Below are positions 233-64,000 of a DNA stretch of 64,000 nucleotides, in pieces. Source of the stretch: Macrostomum lignano. Lineage: Eukaryota. The DNA is taken from positions 1 through 64,000 of the forward strand of contig NIVC01002617.1 in the NCBI GenBank assembly GCA_002269645.1. Direction: 5' to 3'. The notes below the pieces were generated by a model. The model was not told the origin of the DNA. It saw only the letters and a program-made list of their open reading frames with translations, and ran no database searches. Position 1 is the stretch's first letter. Every line of letters begins with the position of its first letter. The position numbers and the translations under genes were made by a program.

Positions 233-252
233 GACCGCCTCATTCTATGCAG

Positions 253-8729: not shown

Positions 8730-8942
8730 ACTGAAGATCTGGACTGGATGCAGTGACTGAAGATCTGGGCTGGATGCAGTGACTGAAGATCTGGGCTGGA
8801 TGCAGTGACTGAAGATCTGGGCTGGATGCAGTGACTGAAGATCTGGGCTGGATGCAGTGACTGAAGATCTGGGCTGGATGCAGTGACTGAAGATCTGGGC
8901 TGGATGCAGTGACTGAAGATCTGGGCTGGATGCAGTGACTGA
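8730..8942. repeat. 26-bp minisatellite GACTGAAGATCTGGGCTGGATGCAGT
   Basis: About 8 near-perfect units. Confidence 0.95.
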
Positions 8943-9174
8943 GTTAGGGGACATCAAAGATTCAGGGCTGGACACAGTTTGTTTAAATTTCCAGACGAGA
9001 ATAGCAGATCGGTGACTGGCCAGTGAAGCTAAAAGAACGGATTTAAATGTTCAAAAGAATCGGAAGTTTGATCAGAATTATACTTTTAAATCCGCGCCTT
9101 AATTATTGAAATTGTTTATTTTATTAGTTAATACGTTCTTCAAATCGGAGAACAAAGACTTAAAACGACACAAA

Positions 9175-9672: not shown

Positions 9673-9684
9673 ATCTCAGTCAGA

Positions 9685-10023
<339 letters not shown>

Positions 10024-10246
10024 TTAAGCAAATTCTTTGTATTTTATCGTTTTGTTAACGTAGCTATGTGCAGATTATTGTAGTTGGGTGTATTATGAAA
10101 TACCAAATATCATCTCAGCTGTCGACCTCTATGGGCCAGATGCTATTTTTAGAACTTCCATTTTCTTGTTTTTTACGTCCAGTTTAAAAATGATTTGTTA
10201 TCTAAAAACTCAATGTGATTAGGAAATTCAATTATGTTTATTATCG

Positions 10247-35003
<24,757 letters not shown>

Positions 35004-36379: not shown

Positions 36380-36712
36380 GGCTACTCGGGCGCCGATATC
36401 TCCATAGTGGTTCGCGACGCCCTAATGATGCCCGTGCGCAAAGTGCAAAACGCCACTCATTTCAAGCGCGTCTCCGGGCCTTCCCGCAAAGATCCAGGCG
36501 TGATCGTGCACGACCTGCTGACTCCGTGCAGCCCGGGCGAGCCTGGCGCTATCGAAATGTCCTGGACCGACATCGAAGGCGACAAGCTGCTGGAGCCGAT
36601 GATGACTATGCAGGACGTGCTGCTCAGTCTTAGCCGAACCAAGCCCACTGTTAATGACGAAGATCTCGAACAGTTGAAGAAGTTTACGAACGACTTTGGT
36701 CAGGAAGGCTAA
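36380..36712 (+). pseudogene. Duplicated 3' part of the VPS4 last exon, lacking its acceptor
   Basis: Identical translation ...[21 protein letters not shown]...FGQEG*. Confidence 0.85.
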
Positions 36713-40066: not shown

Positions 40067-40181
40067 GGGGTCGTACTATAAAGCTGTCGTAGCGTAAGTC
40101 CGATCGTACGTCGGAACTTTTACACTGTGGAGATAGGAGCTAAGAACGATCTTATCTTACGATGGATTTTAGAACGGGCCC
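40067..40181. mobile_element. ~115-bp PIF/Harbinger-like mini-MITE
   Basis: Imperfect TIR GGGGTCGTACTA / (reverse complement) GGGCCCGTTCTA, with 3-bp TSD GTT. Confidence 0.65.
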
Positions 40182-44554: not shown

Positions 44555-44865
44555 TGTGGGAAGTGGGAGGGGAGAGGCAAGAGAGTCGGAGGAGGGTAAG
44601 GGGAGAGGCGAGAGAGTCGGAGGAGGGTGAGGCGAGAGAGTCGGAGGAGGGTGAGGGGAGAGAGTGGGAAGAGGGAGGGGAGAGACTGGGAAGAGGGAGG
44701 GGAGAGACTGGGAAGAGGGAGGGGAGAGACTGGGAAGAGGGAGGGGAGAGACTGGGAAGAGGGAGGGGAGAGTGAGAAGAGGGAGGGGAGAGGGAGAGAG
44801 TGGGAAGAGGAAGGTGAGAGTGGGAGAGTGGAAACAGGGAGGGGGAGAGGGAGAGGAGAGAGAAG
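44555..44865. repeat. Purine-rich repeat (22-bp GAGGGAGGGGAGAGACTGGGAA), mirrored at ~63770-64000
   Basis: Visible. Confidence 0.9.
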
Positions 44866-47057
44866 GCAGGTCATGACCCCTATACCCTTTTGGCTACGCA
44901 TTTCGTTTCGTTTCTTGATAAATTTCTGGAAAATTAGCTACTGGTAATTGGCAGTTCGCTGCTACCTTTAGATTTCTTAGTTCTACAGGTCAGACTCCTG
45001 AGCTCCTAAGTTCCCAAAACCTACCAGGCTCAAGATTTCAATCAAGTTTAAGTGTTCTCTCTGGAAGTACTACTTTAAGTAAGAAGTGCACCAGCCATAG
45101 GAAACGACTTTTATGCTAATGGGGATGTATTAGTTCCTGTAGCCTAGTCGCCACTGCGACTTGGGCCCTATCCCCAACCGGTGCCTTTATACCAGTCACC
45201 AATGCAGTGAAGCGATTCAGCTTGAAGAGTTGCCAACCAGAGTGTATACAGCTCAACCTGGTTGCTTCAAAGCTCCTTCCTGGTCACGGTCTGCTGGGAC
45301 CTACCTTCATCCCATCGTACTATCAATGACAAATGTTTCAGCCCGTCATACAGACAAGTTAAGCCCTCTAAATAATCTACTTCTGACATTTTCCCGGACT
45401 AGACCTACTAACAGTAGTGTACATGTAGTGTAGCAAAAAGTAGTGTAAATAATTAAATCCAGGCAAAAAAGTTATTGAAGCGACACTAATAACTATGCCC
45501 TATCACAAAAGTATCATATGCAACGAATCTAGCTGTAATAAAAAATGGACATGAAAAGAATACTAATAGTAGCTAGTACGTACCAATAGTTCTATGCGAG
45601 GCTGGCATATTATAGCAAAATTTTAAACACTGAATTTGTCTCCATCAGACAAACACAAACAGCTCCACCTCTGCAATGAATTTTTCAAAAAAAGTTGCGA
45701 CCGCGGTATTTATGAATGTTTCTAAGAACCGAAGTAAATTTTTTTCCTAAACAATTTTTGATGAATTATGAAATGGAATACGCTGGCAATGAATGCATTT
45801 ACAGTTACTGGCAGTGCAATTAATAATTAATTGTGCCGCATGTGGGATGCAGTTTTACACGTGGGTACTCGTATGCATGTGCGGCCACAACTACGGCACA
45901 GCAATGAAACATTATTTCTTGTAATAGTTCGTAGATAATTTCAAATTCACAGCATTGAATATTGAATATCGGACAGGGTATAATAAAAGAACCGGTTGCA
46001 ATTACTGCCATGGACCCCAAATAGTCGATTTCCCAGACTGCAACTCAACGACTACTAAAATATATCATTTGTCTTTCAGAGGTACTTTGACAACTCCGGA
46101 TGTCACACTCTCCAAGACGTTTGATTCAGTGCAGGCGTAGATGGAGGATTTGCTTGTCTGAAGTTTGGGAATTGTGAAATTTGTGGATGTGAAGTGTGAG
46201 GATGTACAGTGCGAGGATTTGAAATGTGGGAATTGTAAGTTCGAATGTCACGGGGAGAATGCGAAATTCCACAGTTGCCTTCTAGTGGTCCCTGACCGGC
46301 CTCAACCGCTTGACTAACAAAAGTCCAAAAAGCTCTCAAGCAAAAGCGGATGCAAAAAGCGAAGCAAAGCACTGTTACAGTGTGACGGCGCTTACTGAAG
46401 TGATTGAAAAAGAGATAACCGGAGCTGGCGATAACATGTACGAATGTTAGCGGCTAGATTAATCAGGTAAAAAATTTGGGGCGCAAAATATTTGATGCAG
46501 GTACAGGTATAGAAGATCACTGGGTGAAATCCACCATAGCAGTGCAAACAAAAATATTTTTAATAAATACACACGCGTTTTAAGCTTTTAATACAAAAAT
46601 ACCACTGCTTGTGCTCAAACTGGAGAGCAGTTTTGCCAAAGGCCGGTTTTTGTTGCAAAAAGCTTGGCAAAATTTTCCATATTCTTAGCACTAAATTACC
46701 AAACATGTTCCCTTCTGGACATCGAATTGAAAACCCTGTGTCTTGTTCGAGCTGCACTCACAAGTCCATCGATAAACAGTAAGATGATTTATTGAGAGTC
46801 CAGAAGGTGATATATTGTGCTGTAAAACAGAAAACTTCCTGGACTTAAAACTTGCAGCGAGAACCGGCCTATAGCGAAATTCGCACAGTTTGAGTGTAGC
46901 GTCCTGTTCTTATTGTCCATGAGCTGAGACCGGGACTCTGCTATTATAAATCGGGGTCGCTTCACTTTTCCAGTAAGTTGAAAGCTGAATTTTTTAGAAA
47001 TTTAAATTTGTGCAGTTCGTTGCTAGGCAACAATAAAATACTACTAGAGTTTGGAGC

Positions 47058-50000
47058 TCACTGCCTGCGGCAGGGCCGGACTCCCTCCGCCATCGTGTTG
47101 TGCCGGCCTCGAATAGGGATTCGCCTCGGTGGCGTCGAACCCGATGATGACGGGGAACTCGATGGCGGCGGCTGCTGGGCCTGACGGCGGCCGGAGCTGC
47201 CGGTTGCCAGAGGGCTCTGCGACACGTGCAACGATTTGCGTCTGGGACTCTGCGAGGCCGACGCTGCGCCGGATGAGGCGGCGCGAGCGCGCGGCTGCGG
47301 CGTCTGAATGCTCAGTGGCTGTGACTGTGTCTGCAGCGACTGCGACCGTCCGCTCTCGCTACCACCGCTGGTCACTGAGTCGACGCCTCCACGAAATACG
47401 CGATACCGCAGGTTATCCGAGCTCGCAGCTACGGCCGCGGATGTTGCACCGGCTGCTGCTGCTGTTGCTATCGGCGCCGCCGCCATCGTTGTGGCCAAAG
47501 CTCCGCTAGACTGTCTTGACACGCCGGGACGCTTGACCGAGTGCTGCGGCTGGCCGTGCCGGCGAAGCATCCGGCCATTCTGCCTGGCCCGCCCGTCTGT
47601 CCGGATGGAAGTGGCCGACAGCGGCAGAGCGCGCAGCTGCAGGCGGGACTCGCGCAGGATCATAGCGATCACGGCCGGGTGGGGCAGCCCCGTGACCCGG
47701 GTCTCGTGCACGTGGGTCACCAAGTCGCCGCAGCGCAGTCCGGCTGAATGGGCGGGACTGCCGGGCTGGACGAAGACCACCAGATGGTGCAGTAGAAAGC
47801 GGTTAGTTTCGCCCTGGTAGACGCGAATGGCTCGTATCGTGAACCCAAACCCGCGCGGTCCGCGCAGCATCGTCATGAGTGAGGCGGCGGACTCAGCCTG
47901 AGTAGATGACAGCGCAGTTGTTTGAGTCTTCGGGGGCAGCTGGTGCGCACTGGGGCTGCGGGTCACGGTGACCTCAGTCCCGCTGGCAAGAGGGGATACT
48001 GCCTGAGCCCGACGAAGGCTTGAGGTTCGTCGCATCACCGGGCCGGACGCTGGAGGCGATGTTTCGGCGCGAGTCCGGCCACCCGGTACGGCAAGAGCAA
48101 CTGCACTGGCAGCAGCGGCGGTGGCAGCAGCAGCAGCAGCAGCAGACGCGGTCGCAGCGCAGATCGATGTCGGACGCACCGGTGGCGTGGATGTTGGCTG
48201 CGGCGTCTGCGCCTTGGGAGGCTGGGGTGGCGGGGATGCCGAGGGAGGCGGTGTAAGCTGAGTAGGTGGAGGTGGAGGTGGAGGTGGAGGGAGAGCCGGT
48301 GTTGTTGGAGTTGTCTGTATCGGCGGCGGTGGCGACAGCGGCTGTGGCGATAAGGGCCCCGACAGTAGAGAGAATCGCGGACTACAGCTGCCGAAGCTGT
48401 GAAACAGAGGCGCCTCCTCAGACTCGTCCGTAACCTCGTCCTCGGAGTTGGACTCGTGGTTGTAGCGGTCGGACCGGGGGTCAAAATAGCTGGTGTCCTC
48501 GTCGTGGTCCAACTGCGGCACGAATTCCGCTTTTTCCTTCAGCAGGCCTGTCCAGTCGACGCTAGAGAAGAATGCGTGCTCCTTGACCTGCAAGCGGACC
48601 GGGACACGAGTGCACCAGGTATTACACGACTAACAAGTAGCGAAAGGAGTACGTCAAGCGAACCTCATAGGGTCTCCTAATTTACAATAATCTGACCACT
48701 CCAATCTAGTTCAGTCTGCCAGTCTACTCCGGTTTTATTGGTCTAGCTTGCTTCCAGTTTTGAATGGTTATAATGGATGCAAGCAAGGGTGGTTATGAAC
48801 TTAGTCTAGTGCATGGTAAACTTTTCGAGTTTGTGTGCTTGAGTTGCTCCATTTGTTGTTTTTTCTAAACGGGTTTGCCCGGGGTGGGTCCTCCCGGAGT
48901 CTATGCTCGGACTATCTCAAGATTGCATCTCGTCAGTGGGGTTGGGGTGTCCGAACTGCAAAGGCTCATTATTATTCGCATGGGTTGTCGCCGCCGAACC
49001 AACTTAGAGCATTTAAGATCACCGCGACTCCAGGAACACGTATTGCGCCATGGGCGAAAATTTGATCACACTCCTCGTGATCCAGGTACGAGCAAGTCAC
49101 CCTAGCGCTGAACACGTCTCCTAGGACTAGGATCCCCGAGTTCTGGTGGGTCACACTGGCAGGGTGCCAAATTCTTGGGCTCATGCCTTCCAGGCGGTCC
49201 ATTTACCAGCTGCCTGCATAGGTCAGTTCAAGGCACAAAGGCAGCTCAAGCAGCTATGAGTGCGGTCATCTTCCCGAAACACTGATGCAAGATCATCAGC
49301 CGGGCCGCCCAGAGACACACTTGCACCATCCGGTACAATGCATCCACGATTACAGAGACTGTCGTTACGCTGCTTTTACTCGACTAATTAGTTTGATCCA
49401 TATTACGGCAAAAAAATTGCCCGGGGTTGCTGGTACTTTGGGTATGTATTAAAGCTCATAGACTTGTAAATCACTAATGTTTCTAGTTGCCCCTCACCTC
49501 ATGCGGACCACCCGTCCCCAGCCGAAGCAGTGGCTCGGTCTCCAGCAACCTGCTGATAAGATCGACAGCCTCGGGTGGCAGGGCGAGCTCCTCCTCTTCC
49601 GGCCACTCAATAGTCGGCGGCGGGTCCGACACCAGTAGCATGAACAGCTCTTCGGCCGAGTCGGCGGTGAACGGCACGAAGCCGACCAGAAACTGGTAAA
49701 GAATGATGCCGGCAGCCCACCAGTCGACCGGCTTGCCGTAGCCCTGCCTCAGGATCACCTCCGGGCTGATGTACTCCGGCGTTCCGAATATTTGGGCATC
49801 GCTGAACATTGCACAATCCTTCAGACCTGTCTCGTACAAGCTAGTGGCCAGGGTCATGAGGCCGATCTTGCTGAGGCCGAAGTCGGTCAGCTTGATGTGA
49901 CCCTCACTGCTGATTAGGAGGTTCGACGGCTTCAAGTCTCGATGCACGATGCCGTAACTGTGCAGATACTCCAGGGCCAGCACAATCTCGGCAAAGTACA

Positions 50001-51302
50001 TGCGCGCCAGGTCCAACGGCAGCACCTCAATCTGCTTCAACAGTGAGGCACAATCGCCGCCCTCCACGAATTCCATCACCATGCAGAGATACTTCTTTGT
50101 CTCGAAGGTGCAGAACAGCGACACTACAAAAGGATTGTCAGCAAAAGAGAGGATGTCGCGCTCGGCAAAGGCCTGGTCTACCTGGTTGCGAAGCACAAGG
50201 TGCGTCTTGCGCACCTTCTTCATAGCAAATCGCTGCCGGCTGGCCTTGTGCCGAACCAGGTGCACTGCGCCGTAGGCCCCATTGGATATCAGCTTCACCA
50301 CCTGGCGCATAAGACGTAAAAATCGAATATATAAACGATTTTGCTAAGCCTAATAAAGGTAATTTGATTTTTTTGTTATTCTTACCTGGAAGTCGTCTTC
50401 TGAAGGCTCGCGAAAGAGCTGCTGACTTCCTGAATCAGTCAGCAAAGACGACACGGGCGATGGCGTCCGGTCCGTATCGGCATCGCTCAGACTGTCCAGT
50501 GGGTCCGGCTTGTTGAGACCGAGTTTGGAGACGATGTAGCGCGGTATGTCCGCCTGCAGGCTCTCGGCCCGGCGCACCTGACCCTCAGCAGCCTCGAGCA
50601 GCTGCATGAACTCGGCCGGGTCGAACTCTAAGCACTCCAGCAGGCGTGCAGTTCGAGACACGATCACCAGCAGCTGGCGTCCCCAGCCCAAGACCCTGGG
50701 CAGAGCGTCGCGGCTCTTCTCTTCACATTCGTTGGCCAGCAGCTCAACCTTCTGGCCGATTTCATAGAAGAATGCGCCGGACAGTTTGTGATCCTGGGAT
50801 CTCTGCAGGCACTCGCGAGCAAGCTTCTGCAGCTGCACCAGTGAGTAACGGGCAATCGCGTTGCGTTCGTCGCTCCTCAAGGACTCCAAGCTGGTAATGA
50901 ACTCGTCTAGGCGGTCGATCATCTGGGCAGTGGCCCGAGGAAAATGCTCTTTGTAGACGCTGTTCATCAGCGCAATATCGTGACGCTGCTCCTGCCATCG
51001 CATTGGGCTGCTGCTGAGGCTGTGCGAACGAGGACGGCTGGAGAAACTCGTGTAGTCTTCGGCTGCTGCACTAACGGTTGCTGTTGCTGCTGCTGTAGAC
51101 TCTGGCATTCATTGATGCTGCTGCTGTTGCTGCTGCTGCTTGCTTGCTGCTGCTGTAGACTCTGGCATTGATGCTGCTGCTCGTTGCTGCTGCTGCTGCT
51201 GCTGCTGCTGCCTGTAGACTCTGGCACTGATGCTGCTGCTGTTGGTGCTGTTGAAGGTTCTCCTTGGACGAACTGTGGCTGGTCACGCTGCTGGTCTCCG
51301 GT
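47058..51302 (-). CDS. MAST: Microtubule-associated Ser/Thr kinase (MAST), inverted copy, 5' part cut by the gap. Exons 50386-51302+, 49498-50301, 47058-48587
   Basis: DUF1908-like [24 protein letters not shown] kinase ([29 protein letters not shown]), AGC C-tail (DTSYFD) and PDZ ([16 protein letters not shown]). In frame throughout the visible part. Confidence 0.92.
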
Positions 51303-52182
51303 NNNNNNNNNNNNNNNNNNNNNNNNNNNNNNNNNNNNNNNNNNNNNNNNNNNNNNNNNNNNNNNNNNNNNNNNNNNNNNNNNNNNNNNNNNNNNNNNNN
51401 NNNNNNNNNNNNNNNNNNNNNNNNNNNNNNNNNNNNNNNNNNNNNNNNNNNNNNNNNNNNNNNNNNNNNNNNNNNNNNNNNNNNNNNNNNNNNNNNNNNN
51501 NNNNNNNNNNNNNNNNNNNNNNNNNNNNNNNNNNNNNNNNNNNNNNNNNNNNNNNNNNNNNNNNNNNNNNNNNNNNNNNNNNNNNNNNNNNNNNNNNNNN
51601 NNNNNNNNNNNNNNNNNNNNNNNNNNNNNNNNNNNNNNNNNNNNNNNNNNNNNNNNNNNNNNNNNNNNNNNNNNNNNNNNNNNNNNNNNNNNNNNNNNNN
51701 NNNNNNNNNNNNNNNNNNNNNNNNNNNNNNNNNNNNNNNNNNNNNNNNNNNNNNNNNNNNNNNNNNNNNNNNNNNNNNNNNNNNNNNNNNNNNNNNNNNN
51801 NNNNNNNNNNNNNNNNNNNNNNNNNNNNNNNNNNNNNNNNNNNNNNNNNNNNNNNNNNNNNNNNNNNNNNNNNNNNNNNNNNNNNNNNNNNNNNNNNNNN
51901 NNNNNNNNNNNNNNNNNNNNNNNNNNNNNNNNNNNNNNNNNNNNNNNNNNNNNNNNNNNNNNNNNNNNNNNNNNNNNNNNNNNNNNNNNNNNNNNNNNNN
52001 NNNNNNNNNNNNNNNNNNNNNNNNNNNNNNNNNNNNNNNNNNNNNNNNNNNNNNNNNNNNNNNNNNNNNNNNNNNNNNNNNNNNNNNNNNNNNNNNNNNN
52101 NNNNNNNNNNNNNNNNNNNNNNNNNNNNNNNNNNNNNNNNNNNNNNNNNNNNNNNNNNNNNNNNNNNNNNNNNNNNNNNNNN
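51303..52182. other. Assembly gap (880 N)
   Basis: N run. Confidence 1.
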
Positions 52183-52642
52183 GTCTGTGACTCAGCTATG
52201 GCTCTGTCTGTGTTCAGCTATGGCTCTGTCTGTGATTCAGCTATGGCTCTGTCTGTGACTCAGCTATGGCTCTGTCTGTGATTCAGCTATGGCTCTGTCT
52301 GTGTTCAGCTATGGCTCTGTCTGTGTTCAGCTATGGCTCTGTCTGTGACTCAGCTATGGCTCTGTCTGTGATTCAGCTATGGCTCTGTCTGTGTTCAGCT
52401 ATGGCTCTGTCTGTGACTCAGCTATGGCTGTCTGTGATTCAGCTATGGCTCTGTCTGTGACTCAGCTATGGCTCTGTCTGTGACTCAGCTATGGCTCTGT
52501 CTGTGATTCAGCTATGGCTCTGTCTGTGACTCAGCTATGGCTCTGTCTGTGATTCAGCTATGGCTCTTCTGTGACTCAGCTATGGCTCTGCCTGTGACTC
52601 AGCTATGGCTGCTGTGACTCAGCTATGGCTGCCTGTGACTCA
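52183..52642. repeat. 23-bp minisatellite TCAGCTATGGCTCTGTCTGTGA(C/T)
   Basis: Tandem array adjoining the gap. Confidence 0.95.
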
Positions 52643-52650
52643 ACTATTAG

Positions 52651-55600
52651 ATGCAGTACGCAGCAATGGCAAATTCGCAGAGAGACCCAGCATCCCAGCG
52701 AGTCCGACGCAACAGCAACCGACTGCTGGATGAGCAGCAGCATCGAGTCGGACAGCAGAGCGGCGGCGCCGGCAGCAGCGTCGCAACTACGTCGAACCGG
52801 CTCCAGGTGCACTCATTGCCTGCGCACAGCAGCGGTCGCTATGGCAACCAGCAGGCGCCAGCTCAGCTAGGTGAGAGTGCAACCAAGCAGGACTGGTATA
52901 TCAGCTATAAAGTCGAACATGTTACTATTATTAGTATATGCACGGTTAGACTGCAGCTTTTATTGCAGAAATTTCTCCTGGACAGATCAACGCAGACGGA
53001 GCACAACACAAAACAATTTTGTGCCAACAAAACCTATTGACTATAATTTTGTGCACCAGACTCGCATAGTACTAACATAGTTGGTATAGACGAAAATGCG
53101 GTTTCTAAAAAATGATGAAAGAAGAATAATTGTCAACTACATAGCACGCTTGCAGCGCGAGAAACAGAAAGCAGACAAATGAATTCTGAAGAAACGGAGT
53201 CATCAAATAAAAGTCTGTCGCAAAAACAGTTAAAAGTGCAGACAAGACAACAGGGATACGCAGGTAAAGGGAGAGAGCTGAAAGGGATGCGTACGAAAGA
53301 ATTTTCTGTTTTATTTATTCTTAGAAAAGAAGCTGAGTAGAAAAACGAAAAAACTCCAGTTGACTTGCTCTTTTTTCGAGGCGCAAAAGAATGATAATTT
53401 TTATAGTAAGAAGTCAACAAAAGCAGACGAATTTCAAAGCTTTGAAGTCACAAAACGAAAATTGTTTTTCCATTAATTTTTTACGAGCGTATCTTTACCA
53501 TAACTTGCTTAGTGTAAGTAGGACACTTTCTCCCTCAAAACTGATTGAATTACTACGAAATAAACTATATAAATCACTATTCCTAATGTACGCACTGCGA
53601 AAAACTCTATCCCTAATGTACAAGCTGTAAAAACTCTATCCCTAATGTACGCGCTGTAAAACTCTATCCCTAATGTACACGTGTAAAAACTCTATCCCTA
53701 ATGTACGCGCAAAAACACCCTACCCACAATGTACACACTAAAAAACTGTCCCCGAATGTACACTCGTCCGTCAACAAAAACCAACCTACGAAGCATTAAA
53801 AAGGCTTCCCTTTCCAAGTAAATTTGTCAGACGTTAAATCCACTAGAACCGATCAAAGACCCTTGAAACGTTGCCTGCCTTCACTGGTCGTAGTCCTTGA
53901 GCCGCTGCGACACGCATCGTTTGAATTTTTCAACGGGCGTATCGGCGCTGACAGGCCTGGAGTTGAGGCCGCGCAGTCGGTCGCGCAGTATGCAGATGAA
54001 CTCGTGGAAACTGAGACTGCCGTCTTCGTCATTATCAAACAGTAGAAACACTGTGGAGACCACGTGCGGCGCCAGGGTGTAGCCAACGCAGGCCTTCACC
54101 GCGCGCTGGAACTCCTCCTGGTTGATGGCGTGCCCAGCCAGCGAGTACATCTTCAAAGCCGTGGAGAAGTCCTCCAGGTTATTTAGAAACTGGAAGAATA
54201 GTCGAAAGTCTTCAAATCGAATGCCTTCCTCGCGTACCAGCCGGTCCCGAACGCGCTGCAGCTGTTCCTCTTGCACCTCCGGCGACAGCTTAGTGTAGCG
54301 AAGCAACACCTGGGCGAACTCGCTTTCGGATATGGTCTGCAAACCCTTGGAGAATTCCGTGAACTCAATCTCCAGCACCTCCCATTGCAGATTAGTCATA
54401 AACTTGCTGAACTCGCGAAAGTCCAACTTGTCGGTGCCCGACCGGCCAAAGAAGTGCAGCATCAGCGTCGTGTCCTGCAACGGCGTCACGTCCGAGTAAT
54501 CAATGGCCTCGAGCTCTCCGGCCTGGCGGGACATCATCTTGTTGAGTATGGTGAACTCGGTCTTGTCCACGCGCTGATTCCTGGCCAAGTCGATCATTTT
54601 GAACGCAATTTCAAAGCCGGCCTTGGGCTTAGCCAGGATGCAGAGCAGGAACAGGTACTCCGAGTAGGATATGATGCCTTCGTCTCCCAAGCTGCGGAAA
54701 AGCTTGTTGGAGGCCCACCACCTTGATGGAGTCTTGTACAAGATGCGGCTGAGCTCAGACTCCGAGTAGACGCGGCGCCGCTTCCTGTAGCGCGGTCGGT
54801 CCTGCGTCACCGACTCCAGGAAGTCCTGCGGTGTCATGTATGGCACGCCGTCGAACTCCACAGAGGCGAAGTCGAGAAACCTTCGCTCACGATAGTTGCG
54901 GCCAGTTGCTTGCCAAGGCTTGGCTGGCCGCCGGCTGCAGCTGCCGATGATGGCGATGGCTGGACCTCCTCGGTCTTCGTCCTGGCAACCGCCGCTGCTG
55001 CTGTCGAACTGGCAGCCACTGGCTGAAGCCGGGCGGCTGCCGACCACGAAATCGTCGGTTTGTCGGAGTTATCGACGGTTGCATCATTGGCAGGAGTCGC
55101 AGCGAAAGCGGCAGCCAGTGCAGCGGCTGCGCCATAGGCAGAAGCCGGGCAAGTTTCAGCAGAAGGCGGCTCATCGCCTACGGGGGATTTGAGAAAAAAA
55201 TTGAAATTTTTATTACGAAATTATGATAAAAAATGAGCAAGAATTACAATTATAAAATGATCTCAAAGTTTTCCCCACAGACATATATTAATTATTATTG
55301 TTCCGGGATTTTATAAAAAAATATAAGATCAAAGTCGTACCTGTTAATGGTCGGAGCTCGATGATATTTACAATGCTTTGCCGAGACGAAACTCCTTGCA
55401 CTGAAATCTTATCTCAATAAATAATATATATTATAGTATATTATGCCTGGCTATTTGCGGAGAGGGCGGTCTAGGCTCTAGCCAAATAAGCTTTACTTTG
55501 CCCACACACTCACGCAAAACCTTGGGGCTGGCTTGGAACTGTAATGGCTTAAGACAGAGAATGCATTTTACGCTTTGCTCCCCCTCCCGCTTGTCTTTGC

Positions 55601-56543
55601 CTCCATTTCAAATATAGCTAGCTAGCTTAGCTGCGCACGGCCCGGGCTGTATCCCCCCCCTCTGCCCAGCGCGCGAAGGCTGCTGCTGGTGAAGGATAGG
55701 GCTTGGGGGGTTGGGGTGACAGGGGGAAGCAAATGTACAGGCCCCGTTCCCCTATTTCGTTTATGTACATTGGGTCTTATCTTGTCGCCCCCCCCTATTT
55801 GCGTACACACCACCCGATTTCAAGCGGAAGAAGAGAGCCTGATGAGAGGTGGGGACTTCCTATTCCTCGGCCTCTGTTGCTGCAGCTGCACCCCCCCCTC
55901 ATTTTCGCGCCGTACTGGCTTAGGGATTGAGAGCGCTTCTTCTCCATTGCAGCAAAATCGTAGTTGCACTGCGCCATTCTTCTATTTGATTTTATTATTT
56001 AACACAGCATGTCGGCGAATCTACTGAGGGAAGAAATTTCTTTGCTTCGCCTACTGACAAAGTAGTATGATTGGGATTTTAAAAAGTTATATTGTAGACT
56101 ACTAAGTAGAAAGACGCAAAAAATCAAGAAAACTTAGGCTGCTTGATGTATTATTATAAACACTTAAACAATCCATGGTTGACTATGAAATACAAGCCAG
56201 GAACCAAGCTTGCTGCTTAACGGGCAATGATATGTCGTAAACGTCCGTATTAAGTATAAAATATGACCAATATTGCAGGCAGCCCTACGCGAACTAGCGG
56301 GATCGGGCCTCCGACAACAATCAGCGTTCCCTTGCCCGCCTATCTGCGAGTGGAGACCTCTCACCAGCAGCACCAGCAGCTTCAAGACGCCAGCAGACGC
56401 TGGTCGGTCGCTTCGCTGCCAGCCACGGTGTCCTCGTCTGGCTACGGAAGCAACACACCGGAGACCAGCAGCGTGACCAGCCACAGTTCGTCCAAGGAGA
56501 ACCTTCAACAGCACCAACAGCAGCAGCATCAGTGCCAGAGTCT

Positions 56544-56589
<46 letters not shown>

Positions 56590-56607
56590 CAATGCCAGAG
56601 TCTACAG

Positions 56608-56642
<35 letters not shown>

Positions 56643-59600
56643 TCAATGCCAGAGTCTACAGCAGCAGCAACAGCAACCGTTAGTGCAGCAGCCCGAAGAC
56701 TACACGAGTTTCTCCAGCCGTCCTCGTTCGCACAGCCTCAGCAGCAGCCCAATGCGATGGCAGGAGCAGCGTCACGATATTGCGCTGATGAACAGCGTCT
56801 ACAAAGAGCATTTTCCTCGGGCCACTGCCCAGATGATCGACCGCCTAGACGAGTTCATTACCAGCTTGGAGTCCTTGAGGAGCGACGAACGCAACGCGAT
56901 TGCCCGTTACTCACTGGTGCAGCTGCAGAAGCTTGCTCGCGAGTGCCTGCAGAGATCCCAGGATCACAAACTGTCCGGCGCATTCTTCTATGAAATCGGC
57001 CAGAAGGTTGAGCTGCTGGCCAACGAATGTGAAGAGAAGAGCCGCGACGCTCTGCCAGGGTCTTGGGCTGGGGACGCCAGCTGCTGGTGATCGTGTCTCG
57101 AACTGCACGCCTGCTGGAGTGCTTAGAGTTCGACCCGGCCGAGTTCATGCAGCTGCTCGAGGCTGCTGAGGGTCAGGTGCGCCGGGCCGAGAGCCTGCAG
57201 GCGGACATACCGCGCTACATCGTCTCCAAACTCGGTCTCAACAAGCCGGACCCACTGGACAGTCTGAGCGATGCCGATACGGACCGGACGCCATCGCCCG
57301 TGTCGTCTTTGCTGACTGATTCAGGAAGTCAGCAGCTCTTTCGCGAGCCTTCAGAAGACGACTTCCAGGTAAGAATAACAAAAAAATCAAATTACCTTTA
57401 TTAGGCTTAGCAAAATCGTTTATATATTCGATTTTTACGTCTTATGCGCCAGGTGGTGAAGCTGATATCCAATGGGGCCTACGGCGCAGTGCACCTGGTT
57501 CGGCACAAGGCCAGCCGGCAGCGATTTGCTATGAAGAAGGTGCGCAAGACGCACCTTGTGCTTCGCAACCAGGTAGACCAGGCCTTTGCCGAGCGCGACA
57601 TCCTCTCTTTTGCTGACAATCCTTTTGTAGTGTCGCTGTTCTGCACCTTCGAGACAAAGAAGTATCTCTGCATGGTGATGGAATTCGTGGAGGGCGGCGA
57701 TTGTGCCTCACTGTTGAAGCAGATTGAGGTGCTGCCGTTGGACCTGGCGCGCATGTACTTTGCCGAGATTGTGCTGGCCCTGGAGTATCTGCACAGTTAC
57801 GGCATCGTGCATCGAGACTTGAAGCCGTCGAACCTCCTAATCAGCAGTGAGGGTCACATCAAGCTGACCGACTTCGGCCTCAGCAAGATCGGCCTCATGA
57901 CCCTGGCCACTAGCTTGTACGAGACAGGTCTGAAGGATTGTGCAATGTTCAGCGATGCCCAAATATTCGGAACGCCGGAGTACATCAGCCCGGAGGTGAT
58001 CCTGAGGCAGGGCTACGGCAAGCCGGTCGACTGGTGGGCTGCCGGCATCATTCTTTACCAGTTTCTGGTCGGCTTCGTGCCGTTCACCGCCGACTCGGCC
58101 GAAGAGCTGTTCATGCTACTGGTGTCGGACCCGCCGCCGACTATTGAGTGGCCGGAAGAGGAGGAGCTCGCCCTGCCACCCGAGGCTGTCGATCTTATCA
58201 GCAGGTTGCTGGAGACCGAGCCACTGCTTCGGCTGGGGACGGGTGGTCCGCATGAGGTGAGGGGCAACTAGAAACATTAGTGATTTACAAGTCTATGAGC
58301 TTTAATACATACCCAAAGTACCAGCAACCCCGGGCAATTTTTTTGCCGTAATATGGATCAAACTAATTAGTCGAGTAAAAGCAGCGTAACGACAGTCTCT
58401 GTAATCGTGGATGCATTGTACCGGATGGTGCAAGTGTGTCTCTGGGCGGCCCGGCTGATGATCTTGCATCAGTGTTTCGGGAAGATGACCGCACTCATAG
58501 CTGCTTGAGCTGCCTTTGTGCCTTGAACTGACCTATGCAGGCAGCTGGTAAATGGACCGCCTGGAAGGCATGAGCCCAAGAATTTGGCACCCTGCCAGTG
58601 TGACCCACCAGAACTCGGGATCCTAGTCCTAGGAGACGTGTTCAGCGCTAGGGTGACTTGCTCGTACCTGGATCACGAGGAGTGTGATCAAATTTTCGCC
58701 CATGGCGCAATACGTGTTCCTGGAGTCGCGGTGATCTTAAATGCTCTAAGTTGGTTCGGCGGCGACAACCCATGCGAATAATAATGAGCCTTTGCAGTTC
58801 GGACACCCCAACCCCACTGACGAGATGCAATCTTGAGATAGTCCGAGCATAGACTCCGGGAGGACCCACCCCGGGCAAACCCGTTTAGAAAAAACAACAA
58901 ATGGAGCAACTCAAGCACACAAACTCGAAAAGTTTACCATGCACTAGACTAAGTTCATAACCACCCTTGCTTGCATCCATTATAACCATTCAAAACTGGA
59001 AGCAAGCTAGACCAATAAAACCGGAGTAGACTGGCAGACTGAACTAGATTGGAGTGGTCAGATTATTGTAAATTAGGAGACCCTATGAGGTTCGCTTGAC
59101 GTACTCCTTTGGCTACTTGTTAGTCGTGTAATACCTGGTGCACTCGTGTCCCGGTCCGCTTGCAGGTCAAGGAGCACGCATTCTTCTCTAGCGTCGACTG
59201 GACAGGCCTGCTGAAGGAAAAAGCGGAATTCGTGCCGCAGTTGGACCACGACGAGGACACCAGCTATTTTGACCCCCGGTCCGACCGCTACAACCACGAG
59301 TCCAACTCCGAGGACGAGGTTACGGACGAGTCTGAGGAGGCGCCTCTGTTTCACAGCTTCGGCAGCTGTAGTCCGCGATTCTCTCTACTGTCGGGGCCCT
59401 TATCGCCACAGCCGCTGTCGCCACCGCCGCCGATACAGACAACTCCAACAACACCGGCTCTCCCTCCACCTCCACCTCCACCTCCACCTACTCAGCTTAC
59501 ACCGCCTCCCTCGGCATCCCCGCCACCCCAGCCTCCCAAGGCGCAGACGCCGCAGCCAACATCCACGCCACCGGTGCGTCCGACATCGATCTGCGCTGCG

Positions 59601-60694
59601 ACCGCGTCTGCTGCTGCTGCTGCTGCTGCCACCGCCGCTGCTGCCAGTGCAGTTGCTCTTGCCGTACCGGGTGGCCGGACTCGCGCCGAAACATCGCCTC
59701 CAGCGTCCGGCCCGGTGATGCGACGAACCTCAAGCCTTCGTCGGGCTCAGGCAGTATCCCCTCTTGCCAGCGGGACTGAGGTCACCGTGACCCGCAGCCC
59801 CAGTGCGCACCAGCTGCCCCGAAGACTCAAACAACTGCGCTGTCATCTACTCAGGCTGAGTCCGCCGCCTCACTCATGACGATGCTGCGCGGACCGCGCG
59901 GGTTTGGGTTCACGATACGAGCCATTCGCGTCTACCAGGGCGAAACTAACCGCTTTCTACTGCACCATCTGGTGGTCTTCGTCCAGCCCGGCAGTCCCGC
60001 CCATTCAGCCGGACTGCGCTGCGGCGACTTGGTGACCCACGTGCACGAGACCCGGGTCACGGGGCTGCCCCACCCGGCCGTGATCGCTATGATCCTGCGC
60101 GAGTCCCGCCTGCAGCTGCGCGCTCTGCCGCTGTCGGCCACTTCCATCCGGACAGACGGGCGGGCCAGGCAGAATGGCCGGATGCTTCGCCGGCACGGCC
60201 AGCCGCAGCACTCGGTCAAGCGTCCCGGCGTGTCAAGACAGTCTAGCGGAGCTTTGGCCACAACGATGGCGGCGGCGCCGATAGCAACAGCAGCAGCAGC
60301 CGGTGCAACATCCGCGGCCGTAGCTGCGAGCTCGGATCACCTGCGGTATCGCGTACTTCGTGGAGGCGTCGACTCAGTGACCAGCGGTGGTAGCGAGAGC
60401 GGACGGTCGCAGTCGCTGCAGACACAGTCACAGCCACTGAGCATTCAGACGCCGCAGCCGCGCGCTCGCGCCGCCTCATCCGGCGCAGCGTCGGCCTCGC
60501 AGAGTCCCAGACGCAAATCGTTGCACGTGTCGCAGAGCCCTCTGGCAACCGGCAGCTCCGGCCGCCGTCAGGCCCAGCAGCCGCCGCCATCGAGTTCCCC
60601 GTCATCATCGGGTTCGACGCCACCGAGGCGAATCCCTATTCGAGGCCGGCACAACACGATGGCGGAGGGAGTCCGGCCCTGCCGCAGGCAGTGA
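52651..60694 (+). CDS. MAST: MAST kinase, forward copy. Exons 52651-52870 (inferred), 56279-57368, 57453-58256, 59166-60694
   Basis: Same domains as the inverted copy, plus RRWSVASLP...SSGYGSNTP. The phase-1 donor at 52870 matches the acceptor at 56278. Two 1-bp C-run deletions (~57057, ~59818) relative to the left copy. Confidence 0.9.
53575..53765. repeat. ~30-bp minisatellite AAAAACTCTATCCCTAATGTAC...
   Basis: About 6 units. Confidence 0.75.
53881..55174 (-). CDS. Mitochondrial calcium uptake protein, MICU2/MICU3-like EF-hand protein, with no intron in the CDS
   Basis: [39 protein letters not shown] and EF-hand [14 protein letters not shown]. An Arg/Leu-rich transit-peptide-like N-terminus ([13 protein letters not shown]) lies in another frame, implying a frameshift near 55000. 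Confidence 0.88.
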
Positions 60695-62439
60695 GCTCCA
60701 AACTCTAGTAGTATTTTATTGTTGCCTAGCAACGAACTGCACAAATTTAAATTTCTAAAAAATTCAGCTTTCAACTTACTGGAAAAGTGAAGCGACCCCG
60801 ATTTATAATAGCAGAGTCCCGGTCTCAGCTCATGGACAATAAGAACAGGACGCTACACTCAAACTGTGCGAATTTCGCTATAGGCCGGTTCTCGCTGCAA
60901 GTTTTAAGTCCAGGAAGTTTTCTGTTTTACAGCACAATATATCACCTTCTGGACTCTCAATAAATCATCTTACTGTTTATCGATGGACTTGTGAGTGCAG
61001 CTCGAACAAGACACAGGGTTTTCAATTCGATGTCCAGAAGGGAACATGTTTGGTAATTTAGTGCTAAGAATATGGAAAATTTTGCCAAGCTTTTTGCAAC
61101 AAAAACCGGCCTTTGGCAAAACTGCTCTCCAGTTTGAGCACAAGCAGTGGTATTTTTGTATTAAAAGCTTAAAACGCGTGTGTATTTATTAAAAATATTT
61201 TTGTTTGCACTGCTATGGTGGATTTCACCCAGTGATCTTCTATACCTGTACCTGCATCAAATATTTTGCGCCCCAAATTTTTTACCTGATTAATCTAGCC
61301 GCTAACATTCGTACATGTTATCGCCAGCTCCGGTTATCTCTTTTTCAATCACTTCAGTAAGCGCCGTCACACTGTAACAGTGCTTTGCTTCGCTTTTTGC
61401 ATCCGCTTTTGCTTGAGAGCTTTTTGGACTTTTGTTAGTCAAGCGGTTGAGGCTGGTCAGGGACCACTAGAAGGCAACTGTGGAATTTCGCATTCTCCCC
61501 GTGACATTCGAACTTACAATTCCCACATTTCAAATCCTCGCACTGTACATCCTCACACTTCACATCCACAAATTTCACAATTCCCAAACTTCAGACAAGC
61601 AAATCCTCCATCTACGCCTGCACTGAATCAAACGTCTTGGAGAGTGTGACATCCGGAGTTGTCAAAGTACCTCTGAAAGACAAATGATATATTTTAGTAG
61701 TCGTTGAGTTGCAGTCTGGGAAATCGACTATTTGGGGTCCATGGCAGTAATTGCAACCGGTTCTTTTATTATACCCTGTCCGATATTCAATATTCAATGC
61801 TGTGAATTTGAAATTATCTACGAACTATTACAAGAAATAATGTTTCATTGCTGTGCCGTAGTTGTGGCCGCACATGCATACGAGTACCCACGTGTAAAAC
61901 TGCATCCCACATGCGGCACAATTAATTATTAATTGCACTGCCAGTAACTGTAAATGCATTCATTGCCAGCGTATTCCATTTCATAATTCATCAAAAATTG
62001 TTTAGGAAAAAAATTTACTTCGGTTCTTAGAAACATTCATAAATACCGCGGTCGCAATTTTTTTTGAAAAATTCATTGCAGAGGTGGAGCTGTTGTGTTT
62101 TTGTCTGATGGAGACAAATTCAGTGTTTAAAATTTTGCTATAATATGCCAGCCTCGAATAGAACTATTGGTACGTACTATTGCTACTATTAGTATTCTTT
62201 TCATGTCCATTTTTTAGTACAGCTAGATTCGTTGCATATGATACTTTTGTGATAGGGCATAGTTATTAGTGTCGCTTCAATACCTTTTTTGCCTGGATTT
62301 AATTATTTACACTACTTTTTGCTACACTACATGTACACTACTGTTAGTAGTTCTAGTCCGGGAAAATGTCAGAAGTAGATTATTTAGAGGGCTTAACTTG
62401 TCTGTATGACGGGCTGAAACATTTGTCATTGATAGTACG

Positions 62440-63294
62440 GGCCGTGGTTTTGTCTCGCATAGAGACGCCTAACCGCAGTCACTCCTGTGAAACTTGTCTC
62501 TGCCTGGCTGAAAGCTTGTAATGAGTGAGTAGGCTGGGTTGGAGGGTAATAGTGGATCGGGAAGGGCTGTGGGTAGCTGTATAGGAAGGCAGGCCTATAC
62601 CTGTACCAAGGTGCTCTGACGGTATCCCTCAGGCGCCCTCTGAGCGTACAGCCAGCGACCCTATTAAAGCTGGAGTGTGCCAGAACCAGGACTGAGTCTG
62701 AGCAGGACGAGACCGTTGGCACGGTCACAATAGAAATGGCGGGTTGGCGAAGCAAAGGGTGAAACAGTCCCGGCGATTAGCCCTCTTGCCGCTTCAAAGA
62801 TAAGAGACTGTCTGTTGGCAAGAGTACCCGGGTTTAGTTGGGGGGAGGCTCCTTCGGGTTGCCACGGCCGTGGGGGGCGGTCAAATGACCGGCATTGGCT
62901 TATCTAACCCAGGAGTAGGCACGGGCTTCCCTGAATGGTTCACTCAACCCCCTCTGGCCCCGGGGAGGTTTTTGATATATACCCGGGGGTGGTGGGCGGT
63001 CGGCCCCAGCATGGTTGCCACGGCTCTAGGCCTTCGGGCCATCCCTAACAGGCTAAGGGGCCTTCTAACCTGGTTTTTGGGCACGGGCTCCTGACTGGTT
63101 CGTCGAACCGCTGTCACTGTCTCCCGGGGAGGTTTGGATTTTATGTTATTGCCCTCTATAGTCCTCTATAGTCTAATTGGCTTTTAGTGTACATGAGTAC
63201 ACTCCCAATCTGGAATCTAAATTATCTCTAGTGGCGTAAGAGCCTTTTTACTTAGGCTGAGGCGCCGGAAGTACTTATCATAGTCATAGTCATA
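62440..63294 (+). mobile_element. 855-bp non-coding retroposed element with a (CATAGT)n tail and 15-bp TSD
   Basis: GTCATTGATAGTACG flanks both sides (62425-62439, 63295-63309). The empty site is present in the left arm at ~45313-45330. No convincing ORF. Confidence 0.88.
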
Positions 63295-64000
63295 GTCATT
63301 GATAGTACGATGGGATGAAGGTAGGTCCCAGCAAACCATGACCAGGAAGGAGCTTTGAAGCAACCAGGTTGAGCTGTATACACTCTGGTTGGTAACTCTT
63401 CAAGCTGAATCGCTTCACTGCATTGGTGACTGGTATAAAGGCACCGGTTGGGGATAGGGCCCAAGTCGCAGTGGCGACTAGGCTACAGGAACTAATACAT
63501 CCCCCATTAGCATAAAAGTCGTTTCCTATGGCTGGTGCACTTCTTACTTAAAGTAGTACTTCCAGAGAGAACACTTAAACTTGATTGAAATCTTGAGCCT
63601 GGTAGGTTTTGGGAACTTAGGAGCTCAGGAGTCTGACCTGTAGAACTAAGAAATCTACAGGTAGCAGCGAACTGCCAATTACCAGTAGCTAATTTTCCAG
63701 AAATTTATCAAGAAACGAAACGAAATGCGTAGCCAAAAAGGGTATAGGGGTCATGACCTGCCTTCTCTCTCCTCTCCCTCTCCCCCTCCCTGTTTCCACT
63801 CTCCCACTCTCACCTTCCTCTTCCCACTCTCTCCCTCTCCCCTCCCTCTTCTCACTCTCCCCTCCCTCTTCCCAGTCTCTCCCCTCCCTCTTCCCAGTCT
63901 CTCCCCTCCCTCTTCCCACTCTCCCCTCCCTCTTCCCAGTCTCTCCCCTCCCTCTTCCCAGTCTCTCCCCTCCCTCTTCCCACTCTCCCCTCCCTCTTCC

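What the first reader, a model, noticed from the sequence alone, without database searches (positions are those of the whole stretch)
62425..63309. Recent non-coding retroelement full of hairpins, with two tandem conserved RNA modules (candidate ribozyme-bearing SIDE/SINE)
It is present in one arm only, with a 15-bp TSD and (CATAGT)3 tail, implying mobilisation by a LINE with a microsatellite tail such as RTE/RTEX. It has no tRNA head and no ORF. Perfect hairpins recur: GTCTC/GAGAC 62452-66, GTATAGG/CCTATAC 62579-600, GACCGT/ACGGTC 62711-26, CGGTC/GACCG, GGCC-TTCG-GGCC, and AGTGTAC/GTACACT 63186-203. The first 8 nt GGCCGTGG are complementary to CCACGGCC (62862) and CCACGGCT (63018). Two diverged ~155-nt modules (62826 to ~62975 and 62981 to ~63139) keep ACCCGGG..GGCYCC..GGTTGCCACGGC..TCTAACC..GGCACGGGCT(T)CC(C)TGA(A/C)TGGTT-loop-AACC..CCCGGGGAGGTTT while spacers change. 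Non-LTR elements are known to use 5' self-cleaving ribozymes (HDV-like in R2/RTE, twister in Schistosoma Perere-3). These modules show partial features of both but fit neither canonical fold by eye, so they may be a variant or new motif.
Basis: partly seen in the sequence, partly recalled or inferred. Interest (0 to 1): 0.72.

Follow-up and report, generated by a model that had tools for sequence, protein, structure and literature searches.

The report
Recent non-coding LINE-type retrocopy in flatworm
An 855-base non-coding retrotransposon copy has recently inserted beside a kinase gene in the flatworm Macrostomum lignano; the insertion is clear-cut, but nothing I could test supports the idea that its two repeated modules are self-cleaving ribozymes.

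Summary
An 855-bp insert (62440-63294) lies between perfect 15-bp direct repeats and ends in (CATAGT)n. It is missing from the otherwise 99.5%-identical left arm, where the joined flanks match the empty site exactly. The window is Macrostomum lignano scaffold NIVC01002617.1. A second scaffold carries the same filled site. The "palindrome" is probably a head-to-head scaffolding join of redundant haplotigs.

The insert has no ORF, no tRNA, 5S or 7SL head, no terminal inverted repeats, and six T4-5 runs on the sense strand. It is therefore not a Pol III SINE. It is a LINE-dependent (TPRT) retrocopy: either a 5'-truncated LINE 3' end or an internally deleted derivative.

The two ~155-nt modules are a real, old tandem duplication (59% identity) with clustered conserved blocks. 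The ribozyme reading found no support:
- No Rfam ribozyme match, even at E<=10.
- No hammerhead or twister core.
- HDV-like topologies can be drawn at the same rate as in shuffled sequence.
- Fold energies are no better than shuffles.
- Covariation between the modules depends on the alignment.
- This copy keeps 386 nt upstream of the modules.

No other family copies could be retrieved, so covariation and 5'-end tests remain open. Ordinary; low interest.

The parts
62425..62439 (+). 5' copy of the target-site duplication, GTCATTGATAGTACG
   Evidence: Identical to 63295-63309. It is present once in the left arm at 45316-45330.
62440..62447 (+). 5'-terminal 8-mer GGCCGTGG. It recurs at 62866-62873 and is complementary to 62862-62869 and, with a terminal G.U, to 63018-63025.
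   Evidence: a perfect complement appears in 1.1% of shuffles, or 2.4% if a terminal G.U is allowed. Only 4 of 847 8-mers in the element have such a partner.
62440..62825 (+). Unique non-coding 'head' (386 nt, 55% GC) with hairpins at 62452-66, 62579-600, 62628-44 and 62711-26
   Evidence: At most 27 codons are open from the 5' end. It has no significant homology to the modules, p 0.3-0.5.
62826..62980 (+). Module 1 (60% GC)
   Evidence: Aligns to module 2 with score 95 against a null of 25.6 +/- 4.8. It folds as a long irregular hairpin closed by CCCGGG/CCCGGG, z = -0.53.
62981..63140 (+). Module 2 (64% GC), a diverged tandem copy of module 1
   Evidence: Homopolymer lengths at its start differ in the second assembled copy.
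63141..63278 (+). AT-richer 3' region (39% GC). It contains CCTCTATAGT x2 (63153-63173), a 7-bp hairpin (63186-63203) and a two-part stem-loop (about 63232-63266) 13 nt before the tail.
   Evidence: (fold z = -1.68).
63279..63294 (+). (CATAGT)n tail, continuing in register into the GTCAT of the 3' target duplication
63295..63309 (+). 3' copy of the target-site duplication
45316..45330 (-). Empty (unoccupied) target site in the other assembled copy of the locus
   Evidence: Inverted-repeat pairs I5 and I8 share these 15 bp. See also the alignment and the joined-flank check.

Best explanation
The 855-bp insert is a dead, non-coding copy of a non-LTR (LINE-type) retrotransposon of Macrostomum lignano. 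It was made by target-primed reverse transcription. Most probably it is the 3' untranslated part of the LINE, either 5'-truncated or internally deleted.

Inferred mechanism:
1. The LINE endonuclease nicked the bottom strand opposite the CATTT|GTCAT step.
2. The freed 3' end (...ATGAC) annealed to the (CAUAGU)n tail of the RNA through up to 5 nt of microhomology and primed cDNA synthesis.
3. A staggered second nick 10-15 bp away produced the target duplication.
4. The 3' stem-loops just upstream of the tail are the likely recognition site for the reverse transcriptase, as in 'stringent' LINE/SINE pairs.

The two ~155-nt GC-rich modules are an old tandem duplication within the untranslated region. 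Their conserved blocks are mutually complementary (CCCGGG with CCCGGG, GCCACGGC with GCACGGGC). They probably reflect a structured or protein-binding RNA or DNA segment, not a self-cleaving ribozyme.

Shown: the insertion, the target duplication, the tail, the empty site, the non-coding nature, and the duplication. Inferred: the nick position, the priming by microhomology, and the roles of the stem-loops and modules.
For: Insertion anatomy:
- Perfect 15-bp duplication, a tail in register with the target, and an exact empty site.
- No terminal inverted repeats: 3 of 30 positions match. The ends are GG...TA, not the TG...CA of an LTR.
- No ORF, and no homologue for the spurious ORFs.
- No tRNA and no other Rfam family.
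- Six T4-5 runs on the sense strand argue against Pol III transcription and so against a classical SINE.

Host and locus:
- The host is M. lignano, assembly Mlig_3_7.
- The same filled site is present on scaffold NIVC01004298.1 and differs only by homopolymer lengths.
- The insertion is therefore real and polymorphic among redundant copies that are 99.4-99.75% identical.

Modules:
- Clearly homologous to each other.
- Fold no better than shuffles.
- No ribozyme signatures.
- This very copy contains 386 nt upstream of the modules plus both modules intact, so its template RNA was not cut there.
Against: - No autonomous LINE sharing the 3' end could be found. No ORF of at least 100 aa in the window has an RT or endonuclease domain, and no eukaryotic DNA collection was searchable.
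- If the copy is 5'-truncated, the parent's 3' UTR must be at least about 770 nt.
- The 5'-terminal 8-mer is complementary to the best-conserved block of both modules (p about 0.01-0.02). A random truncation point does not predict this.
- Conserved blocks are non-randomly clustered (p = 0.0006).
- The consensus fold of the two modules is far more stable than column shuffles (z = -4.3 on the sense strand, -2.8 on the antisense strand). Some constraint on the modules is therefore likely, and its nature is unknown.
Confidence: 0.55

Rival explanations
1. It is a full-length member of a dedicated non-autonomous, non-Pol-III retroposon family (SIDE-like) with a defined 5' end at GGCCGTGG. The family is mobilised in trans by a LINE with a (CATAGT)n tail. 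The modules are functional RNA structure, for example binding sites for LINE proteins, but not a ribozyme.
For: - No coding remnant at all: at most 27 open codons from the 5' end.
- The 5'-terminal 8-mer is non-randomly related to the modules.
- Conservation between the modules is clustered.
- The consensus fold is strongly better than column shuffles, and more so on the sense strand.
- The 3' region carries stem-loops just before the tail.
Against: - Only one family member could be examined, so neither a shared 5' end nor copy number is known.
- No promoter is identifiable.
- Single-sequence fold energies are ordinary.
- Compensatory-change signal vanishes with a different alignment.
Confidence: 0.33
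2. The element carries a self-cleaving ribozyme. One option is that each module is a ribozyme. The other is that the 5' end (GGCCGUGG) pairs with CCACGGCU of module 2 as P1 of a very large HDV-like fold. In that fold P2 would be GGCCC/GGGCC, P3 CAG/UUG and P4 GGCC-UUCG-GGCC. Cleavage would define the element's 5' end.
For: - The 5' 8-mer and module complementarity includes a terminal G.U, as at HDV-like cleavage sites.
- An HDV-like strand order can be drawn for module 2 (reading; my descriptor also returns a P1 at the 5' end).
- Flatworm and other LINEs do use 5' ribozymes (PMC8501958, PMC3774820, PMC3185411).
- Large peripheral J1/2 domains exist in HDV-like ribozymes (PMC4908430).
Against: - No Rfam ribozyme family matches, even at E<=10.
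- No hammerhead or twister core.
- HDV-like topologies occur at the chance rate in shuffles.
- The drawn fold needs a J1/2 of about 555 nt, an L3 of 5 nt and a J4/2 of 16 nt, and its P3 cannot form in module 1.
- Modules acting alone would cut the element in its 3' half, yet this copy is uncut.
- Covariation is not robust.
Confidence: 0.04
3. There was no insertion. The filled state is ancestral, and the left arm lost the segment by recombination between the 15-bp repeats. Alternatively, the difference is an assembly artefact.
For: The assembly is highly redundant, and the 'palindrome' is probably a scaffolding artefact.
Against: - A microsatellite tail that merges in register with one repeat, together with a perfect duplication of a sequence that is single-copy in the empty state, is the signature of TPRT and not of deletion.
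- The filled state is assembled independently on two scaffolds with the same junctions.
Confidence: 0.03

Closest known systems
'Stringent-type' LINE/SINE partners with a 3' stem-loop and a short-repeat tail, such as eel UnaL2/UnaSINE1 and the L2, CR1 and RTE clades generally (own knowledge: Kajikawa and Okada 2002)
   Same: - A tail that is a short tandem repeat rather than poly(A).
- Stem-loops just upstream of the tail.
- A variable-length target duplication.
- The tail is in register with the target, which fits primer annealing or slippage.
   Different: - The tail unit CATAGT and the partner LINE are unidentified.
- There is no Pol III head.
- Recognition of the stem-loop is inferred, not tested.
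Perere-3 (RTE clade) of Schistosoma mansoni, with a twister-variant ribozyme at its 5' end (PMC8501958)
   Same: - A flatworm non-LTR element.
- The target duplication abuts the element's 5' end.
   Different: - There the ribozyme is compact, sits at the extreme 5' end and keeps the conserved twister loops.
- Here there is no twister match, and the candidate modules are internal (positions 387-701 of 855).
L1Tc/NARTc Pr77 and R2 5' HDV-like ribozymes (PMC3185411, PMC3383444, PMC3774820)
   Same: - NARTc is a non-coding deletion derivative (SIDE-like) of a LINE.
- The 5'-terminal G could pair with a downstream strand through a G.U wobble.
   Different: - Those ribozymes lie within the first 77 to about 200 nt.
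- Here the only P1 partner is 420-580 nt away, the other elements are out of range, and such folds arise at the chance rate.
Tandem 'monomer' repeats in LINE untranslated regions, such as mouse L1 5'-UTR monomers (own knowledge)
   Same: Tandem units of about 150-200 bp inside the non-coding part of a LINE-type element, diverged but with conserved blocks.
   Different: - There are only two units.
- They lie in the 3' half, not at the 5' end.
- Promoter activity has not been tested.

Membership tests
LINE-mediated (TPRT) retrocopy | Target-site duplication of variable length (about 5-20 bp) flanking the insert, with a matching empty site | tested here: met
   15-bp perfect repeats. The empty site is in the left arm, and the joined flanks equal the empty site.
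LINE-mediated (TPRT) retrocopy | 3' end is poly(A) or a short tandem repeat abutting the 3' duplication | tested here: met
   (CATAGT)n at 63279-63294, in register with GTCAT of the duplication.
LINE-mediated (TPRT) retrocopy | No terminal inverted repeats and no LTR-type TG...CA ends | tested here: met
   3 of 30 positions match between the termini. The ends are GG...TA.
LINE-mediated (TPRT) retrocopy | An autonomous LINE in the same genome shares the 3' end and tail | not testable with these tools
   There is no RT or EN domain in the window. No searchable collection holds the M. lignano genome as DNA. The metagenome and prokaryote scans gave only chance hits.
SINE (Pol III-transcribed) | 5' head derived from tRNA, 7SL or 5S with an internal promoter | tested here: not met
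   ARAGORN finds nothing. Rfam shows no tRNA, 5S or 7SL match even at E<=10.
SINE (Pol III-transcribed) | No internal Pol III terminators (T4 or longer) on the sense strand | tested here: not met
   There are six T4-5 runs, the first at nt 9-12 of the element.
5'-truncated LINE copy | Sequence is collinear with the 3' part of a longer coding element | not testable with these tools
   No other copy could be retrieved. At most 27 open codons run from the 5' end.
HDV-like self-cleaving ribozyme | Compact nested double pseudoknot (P1 of 7 bp, P1.1, P2, P3 of 3 bp with L3 of about 7-8 nt, P4, short J4/2 with the catalytic C) starting at the cleavage site | tested here: inconclusive
   Descriptor hits number 13, against a shuffle mean of 7.9 and maximum of 17. 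The only fold that uses the 5' end needs a J1/2 of about 555 nt, an L3 of 5 nt and a J4/2 of 16 nt, and it exists only for module 2.
HDV-like self-cleaving ribozyme | Match to a curated covariance model | tested here: not met
   There is no Rfam hit at gathering score or at E<=10. These models are known to miss divergent members.
Twister ribozyme | Conserved L1, L2 and L4 nucleotides (L4 ...CCNAAGC...) and a covariance-model match | tested here: not met
   No motif on either strand. No Rfam hit.
Hammerhead ribozyme | CUGANGA and GAAA core around three helices | tested here: not met
   No CUGANGA on either strand. No Rfam hit. The modules carry CUGAAUG and CUGACUG instead.
Any self-cleaving ribozyme | Site-specific self-scission | not testable with these tools
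   This requires in vitro transcription and cleavage assays.

The most novel reading that the evidence does not exclude
The 5' terminus GGCCGUGG pairs with the conserved CCACGGCU/C block of the modules to form the substrate helix of an unusually large, split HDV-like (or new) self-cleaving ribozyme. That ribozyme would define the 5' end of a non-autonomous flatworm retroposon. The duplicated module would give two alternative catalytic cores.
Probability: 0.03. Interest if true: 0.7.

Novelty: new member of a known kind. Interest (0 to 1): 0.2.

Why it matters
The insert shows that a LINE-type retrotransposition system with a (CATAGT)n tail has been active very recently in Macrostomum lignano, a model flatworm for regeneration and transgenesis. 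The accessible literature on this species treats LTR elements in detail but not non-LTR elements.

The presence/absence polymorphism gives a ready genotyping marker. It also gives a clean example of tail-to-target microhomology in TPRT.

If the modules did turn out to be catalytic, that would add a new ribozyme architecture to retrotransposon biology. Nothing found here points that way.

Tried and rejected
1. Collecting family copies. None of these routes reached another member.
- Spurious ORFs of the element used as protein handles: 109 aa against 5.8 billion proteins gave no hit. 74 aa by phmmer against 1.8 billion representatives gave only unrelated repeat proteins.
- A two-block module pattern in metagenome contigs (17 loci) and genome contigs (7 loci) gave only chance hits in GC-rich bacteria, with no homology by blastn.
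- Two patterns in viral contigs gave nothing relevant.
- A full-text search of papers for element motifs gave only unrelated primers.
- An exact look-up of the kinase ORF found nothing on record.

2. Head as a third, partial module beginning at GGCCGTGG. It looked plausible by eye, but alignment scores equal those of shuffles (p 0.3-0.5). Rejected.

3. Covariation between the two modules. RNAalifold gives 6 double changes in 39 pairs. The test is circular with only two sequences. A permutation of the variable columns gives p = 0.02 with one alignment and 0.19-0.49 with another. Not robust.

4. HDV-like descriptor scan. It is too permissive in this GC-rich sequence to carry information.

5. Twister-like reading of the first 110 nt (UCA-CUCC...AAGC...GGAGGG). 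It lacks the L4 CCC/AAGC core and has no Rfam hit. Rejected.

6. A partner LINE inside the window. No RT or EN domain in 62 ORFs.

7. Literature search for a (CATAGT)n-tailed LINE, or for any description of non-LTR elements in Macrostomum. Nothing found.
Full report
**What is in the sequence**

The window holds two long inverted arms (about 44.6-51.3 kb and 52.2-64 kb) around an 880-N gap at 51303-52182. Inverted-repeat pairs I5 (45316-45573 with 62182-62439) and I8 (45121-45330 with 63295-63504) share the 15 bases 45316-45330 in the left arm. In the right arm they are 855 bp apart.

The alignment shows the right arm as ...AAACATTT GTCATTGATAGTACG [GGCCGTGG ... CATAGTCATAGTCATA] GTCATTGATAGTACG ATGGG.... 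The left arm carries a single GTCATTGATAGTACG. Joining the right-arm flanks with one repeat copy reproduces the left-arm sequence exactly across the junction.

The tail is CATAGTCATAGTCATA and continues in register into the GTCAT of the downstream repeat (TRF: period 6, 3.7 copies, 63278-63299). Up to 5 nt of the '15-bp' duplication could therefore be tail-to-target microhomology. The termini are not inverted repeats (3 of 30 positions match), and the ends are GG...TA.

**Whose genome, and what the 'arms' are**

The ORFs in the arms encode a MAST-type kinase with DUF1908, Pkinase and PDZ domains. The 511-aa ORF is 100% identical to BOX15_Mlig033204g1 of Macrostomum lignano. The locus is scaffold NIVC01002617.1 of assembly GCA_002269645.1, and window coordinates equal record coordinates.

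That assembly was built with Canu on PacBio reads and then scaffolded with SSPACE. It came from a line with extra large chromosomes and contains 180 Mb of duplicated blocks at 95% identity or more (PMC5730564).

An exact look-up of the EF-hand gene in the centre of the 'palindrome' found a second scaffold, NIVC01004298.1. It is collinear with the right arm at 99.4% identity and carries the same filled site (L028 1541-2393). The element there differs only by three homopolymer-length indels, which are typical PacBio consensus errors. Beyond the 23-bp minisatellite, that scaffold runs into 8 kb with no match in the window.

Two conclusions follow:
- The window's palindrome is most simply a head-to-head scaffolding join of redundant haplotigs.
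- The insert is a presence/absence polymorphism among copies that are 99.4-99.75% identical: filled twice, empty once.

The element sits about 1.7 kb downstream of the last annotated MAST exon, in the same orientation as the gene.

**What kind of element**

The 10-15-bp duplication, the short-repeat tail abutting the 3' duplication, the exact empty site and the absence of TIRs or LTR ends together form the signature of LINE-type target-primed reverse transcription.

The element is non-coding:
- Sense-strand ORFs are at most 74 aa.
- At most 27 codons are open from the 5' end.
- The longest ORFs have no homologues.

There is no tRNA and no Rfam family at gathering score anywhere in the window. 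At E<=10 in 62300-63450 only two noise hits appear: SNORD23 at E 6.3 and HOTTIP_2 at E 0.07. Six T4-5 runs lie on the sense strand, the first at nt 9-12, and none lie on the antisense strand. A Pol III SINE is therefore excluded.

What remains is either a 5'-truncated copy of a LINE with a 3' UTR of at least about 770 nt, or an internally deleted, SIDE-like non-autonomous derivative. I could not separate these. No ORF of at least 100 aa in the window has an RT or endonuclease domain, and no available collection holds this genome as searchable DNA.

I lean toward 'LINE 3' part' for three reasons: most LINE-type insertions are 5'-truncated, there is no recognisable promoter head, and tandem repeats are common in LINE UTRs. 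The leaning is mild.

**The hairpins and the modules**

Their number is only marginally above shuffles: 14 against 7.2 +/- 3.5, p about 0.05. Minimum free energies are ordinary:

| Region | z-score against shuffles |
|---|---|
| Whole element, sense strand | -0.75 |
| Whole element, antisense strand | -1.45 |
| Module 1 | -0.53 |
| Module 2 | -1.00 |
| 3' 154 nt | -1.68 |

The two modules are true homologues (local score 95 against 25.6 +/- 4.8) at only 59% column identity. The matches are clustered into blocks of 13, 12 and 10 nt (p = 0.0006 by permutation). Aligners themselves favour such blocks, so this p-value is somewhat optimistic.

The blocks are mutually complementary: CCCGGG with CCCGGG, and GCCACGGC with GCACGGGC. 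The RNAalifold consensus is accordingly much more stable than column shuffles:

| Strand | Consensus energy | Column-shuffle null | z |
|---|---|---|---|
| Sense | -45 | -26.6 +/- 4.3 | -4.3 |
| Antisense | -29.9 | -18.6 +/- 4.0 | -2.8 |

That result measures conserved palindromic sequence, not covariation.

To test covariation, I kept the conserved columns and permuted only the variable ones. The sense-strand signal was p = 0.02 with an L-INS-i alignment but 0.19-0.49 with G-INS-i, and it was absent on the antisense strand. With two sequences, covariation is therefore not established.

One base-level caution applies. The start of module 2 (CCCGGGGG) and two other homopolymers differ between the two assembled copies.

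**The ribozyme idea**

- Rfam's hammerhead, twister, HDV-like, pistol, hatchet and other models give nothing, even at E<=10.
- There is no CUGANGA core and no twister L4-like CCNAAGC on either strand. The modules carry CUGAAUG and CUGACUG.
- My own relaxed descriptor for the HDV-type nested double pseudoknot finds 13 candidate P1 sites. Dinucleotide shuffles give 7.9 on average and up to 17. Being able to draw such a fold here means nothing.

The most interesting drawing uses these elements:

| Element | Sequence or size |
|---|---|
| P1 | 5' terminus GGCCGUGG with CCACGGCU of module 2 |
| P2 | GGCCC / GGGCC |
| P3 | CAG / UUG |
| P4 | GGCC-UUCG-GGCC |
| J1/2 | about 555 nt |
| L3 | 5 nt |
| J4/2 | 16 nt |

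The three size values are out of range, and P3 cannot form in module 1.

Position also argues against the idea. Known LINE ribozymes sit at the extreme 5' end so that cleavage defines the element's terminus (PMC8501958, PMC3774820, PMC3185411). These modules occupy nt 387-701. This copy retains everything upstream of them, so its template was not cut there.

One observation stays unexplained. The 5'-terminal 8-mer has a perfect complement in the best-conserved block (1-2% of shuffles; only 4 of 847 8-mers in the element have such a partner). I tested whether the head is a third, partial module starting at that 8-mer, and it is not (p 0.3-0.5).

**Mechanism, as far as it can be stated**

Shown: a retrocopy inserted by a staggered-cut mechanism, with a short-repeat tail in register with the target.

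Inferred:
- A bottom-strand nick opposite CATTT|GTCAT.
- Priming by annealing of ...ATGAC-3' to the (CAUAGU)n tail.
- Recognition of the 3' stem-loops (63186-63203 and about 63232-63266) by the partner reverse transcriptase, by analogy with stringent LINE/SINE pairs (own knowledge).
- The modules being a duplicated, GC-rich structured or protein-binding segment of the untranslated region.

**Verdict**

The 'recent non-coding retroelement' reading is supported, 'SINE' is not, and 'ribozyme-bearing' has no support but cannot be formally excluded without other copies or a cleavage assay.

This is a new, probably uncatalogued member of a well-known kind of element in a genome whose non-LTR elements have not been described in the accessible literature. 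Interest is low. About 3% remains for a genuinely new, large, split ribozyme.

Noticed in passing
window 44657-51302 and 52183-64000, continuing to record position about 69.7 kb; L028 12906-20957: The large 'palindrome' around the 880-N gap is probably not real. A second scaffold (NIVC01004298.1) is collinear with the right arm. Past the minisatellite it continues into 8 kb that has no match in the window, where the upstream exons of a 1380-aa gene model lie. Arm identity falls outward from 100% to 99.5% to 94-96%.
   Followed up: partly
window 62847, about 62950 and 62983, compared with L028 1541-2393: The two assembled copies of the element differ only by homopolymer lengths: G6 or G7, C5 or C4, and CCCGGGGG or CCGGGG. 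These are likely PacBio consensus errors. They fall inside the modules, so base-level arguments about the CCCGGG closing stems are uncertain.
   Followed up: yes
window 34671-34970 and 36380-36679: Two 100%-identical 300-bp direct repeats lie 1709 bp apart. They may be the LTRs of a very small, recent LTR or TRIM-like element, or a recent segmental duplication.
   Followed up: no
window 16145-16354 and 34140-34356; 38632-38711 and 40085-40164: Further dispersed direct repeats at 78-96% identity suggest other unclassified interspersed repeat families in the window.
   Followed up: no
window 1-16000, 32763-33293, 42745-43364, 44550-44860/63736-64000, 52183-52670: There is an unusually high density of minisatellites with periods of 14-35 bp, some of them GC-rich. 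A GA-rich 22-bp array lies symmetrically in both arms (44.6-44.9 kb and 63.7-64.0 kb), and a 23-bp array abuts the assembly gap. This is consistent with the reported 15% tandem-repeat content of this genome.
   Followed up: no
window 53881-54837 (-): A single-exon EF-hand/Rab11-FIP3-like gene of 318 aa lies between the arms. In the second scaffold it is nested inside an intron of the MAST-kinase gene model, on the opposite strand.
   Followed up: partly
window 62440-63294: Strand asymmetry of homopolymers: there are six T runs of 4 or more and no A run of 4 or more on the sense strand of the element.
   Followed up: partly
window 63153-63173: CCTCTATAGT x2 lies about 120 nt upstream of the (CATAGT)n tail. 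The similarity of TATAGT to the tail unit could mark an older, internalised tail, which would make the element composite. This was not tested.
   Followed up: no
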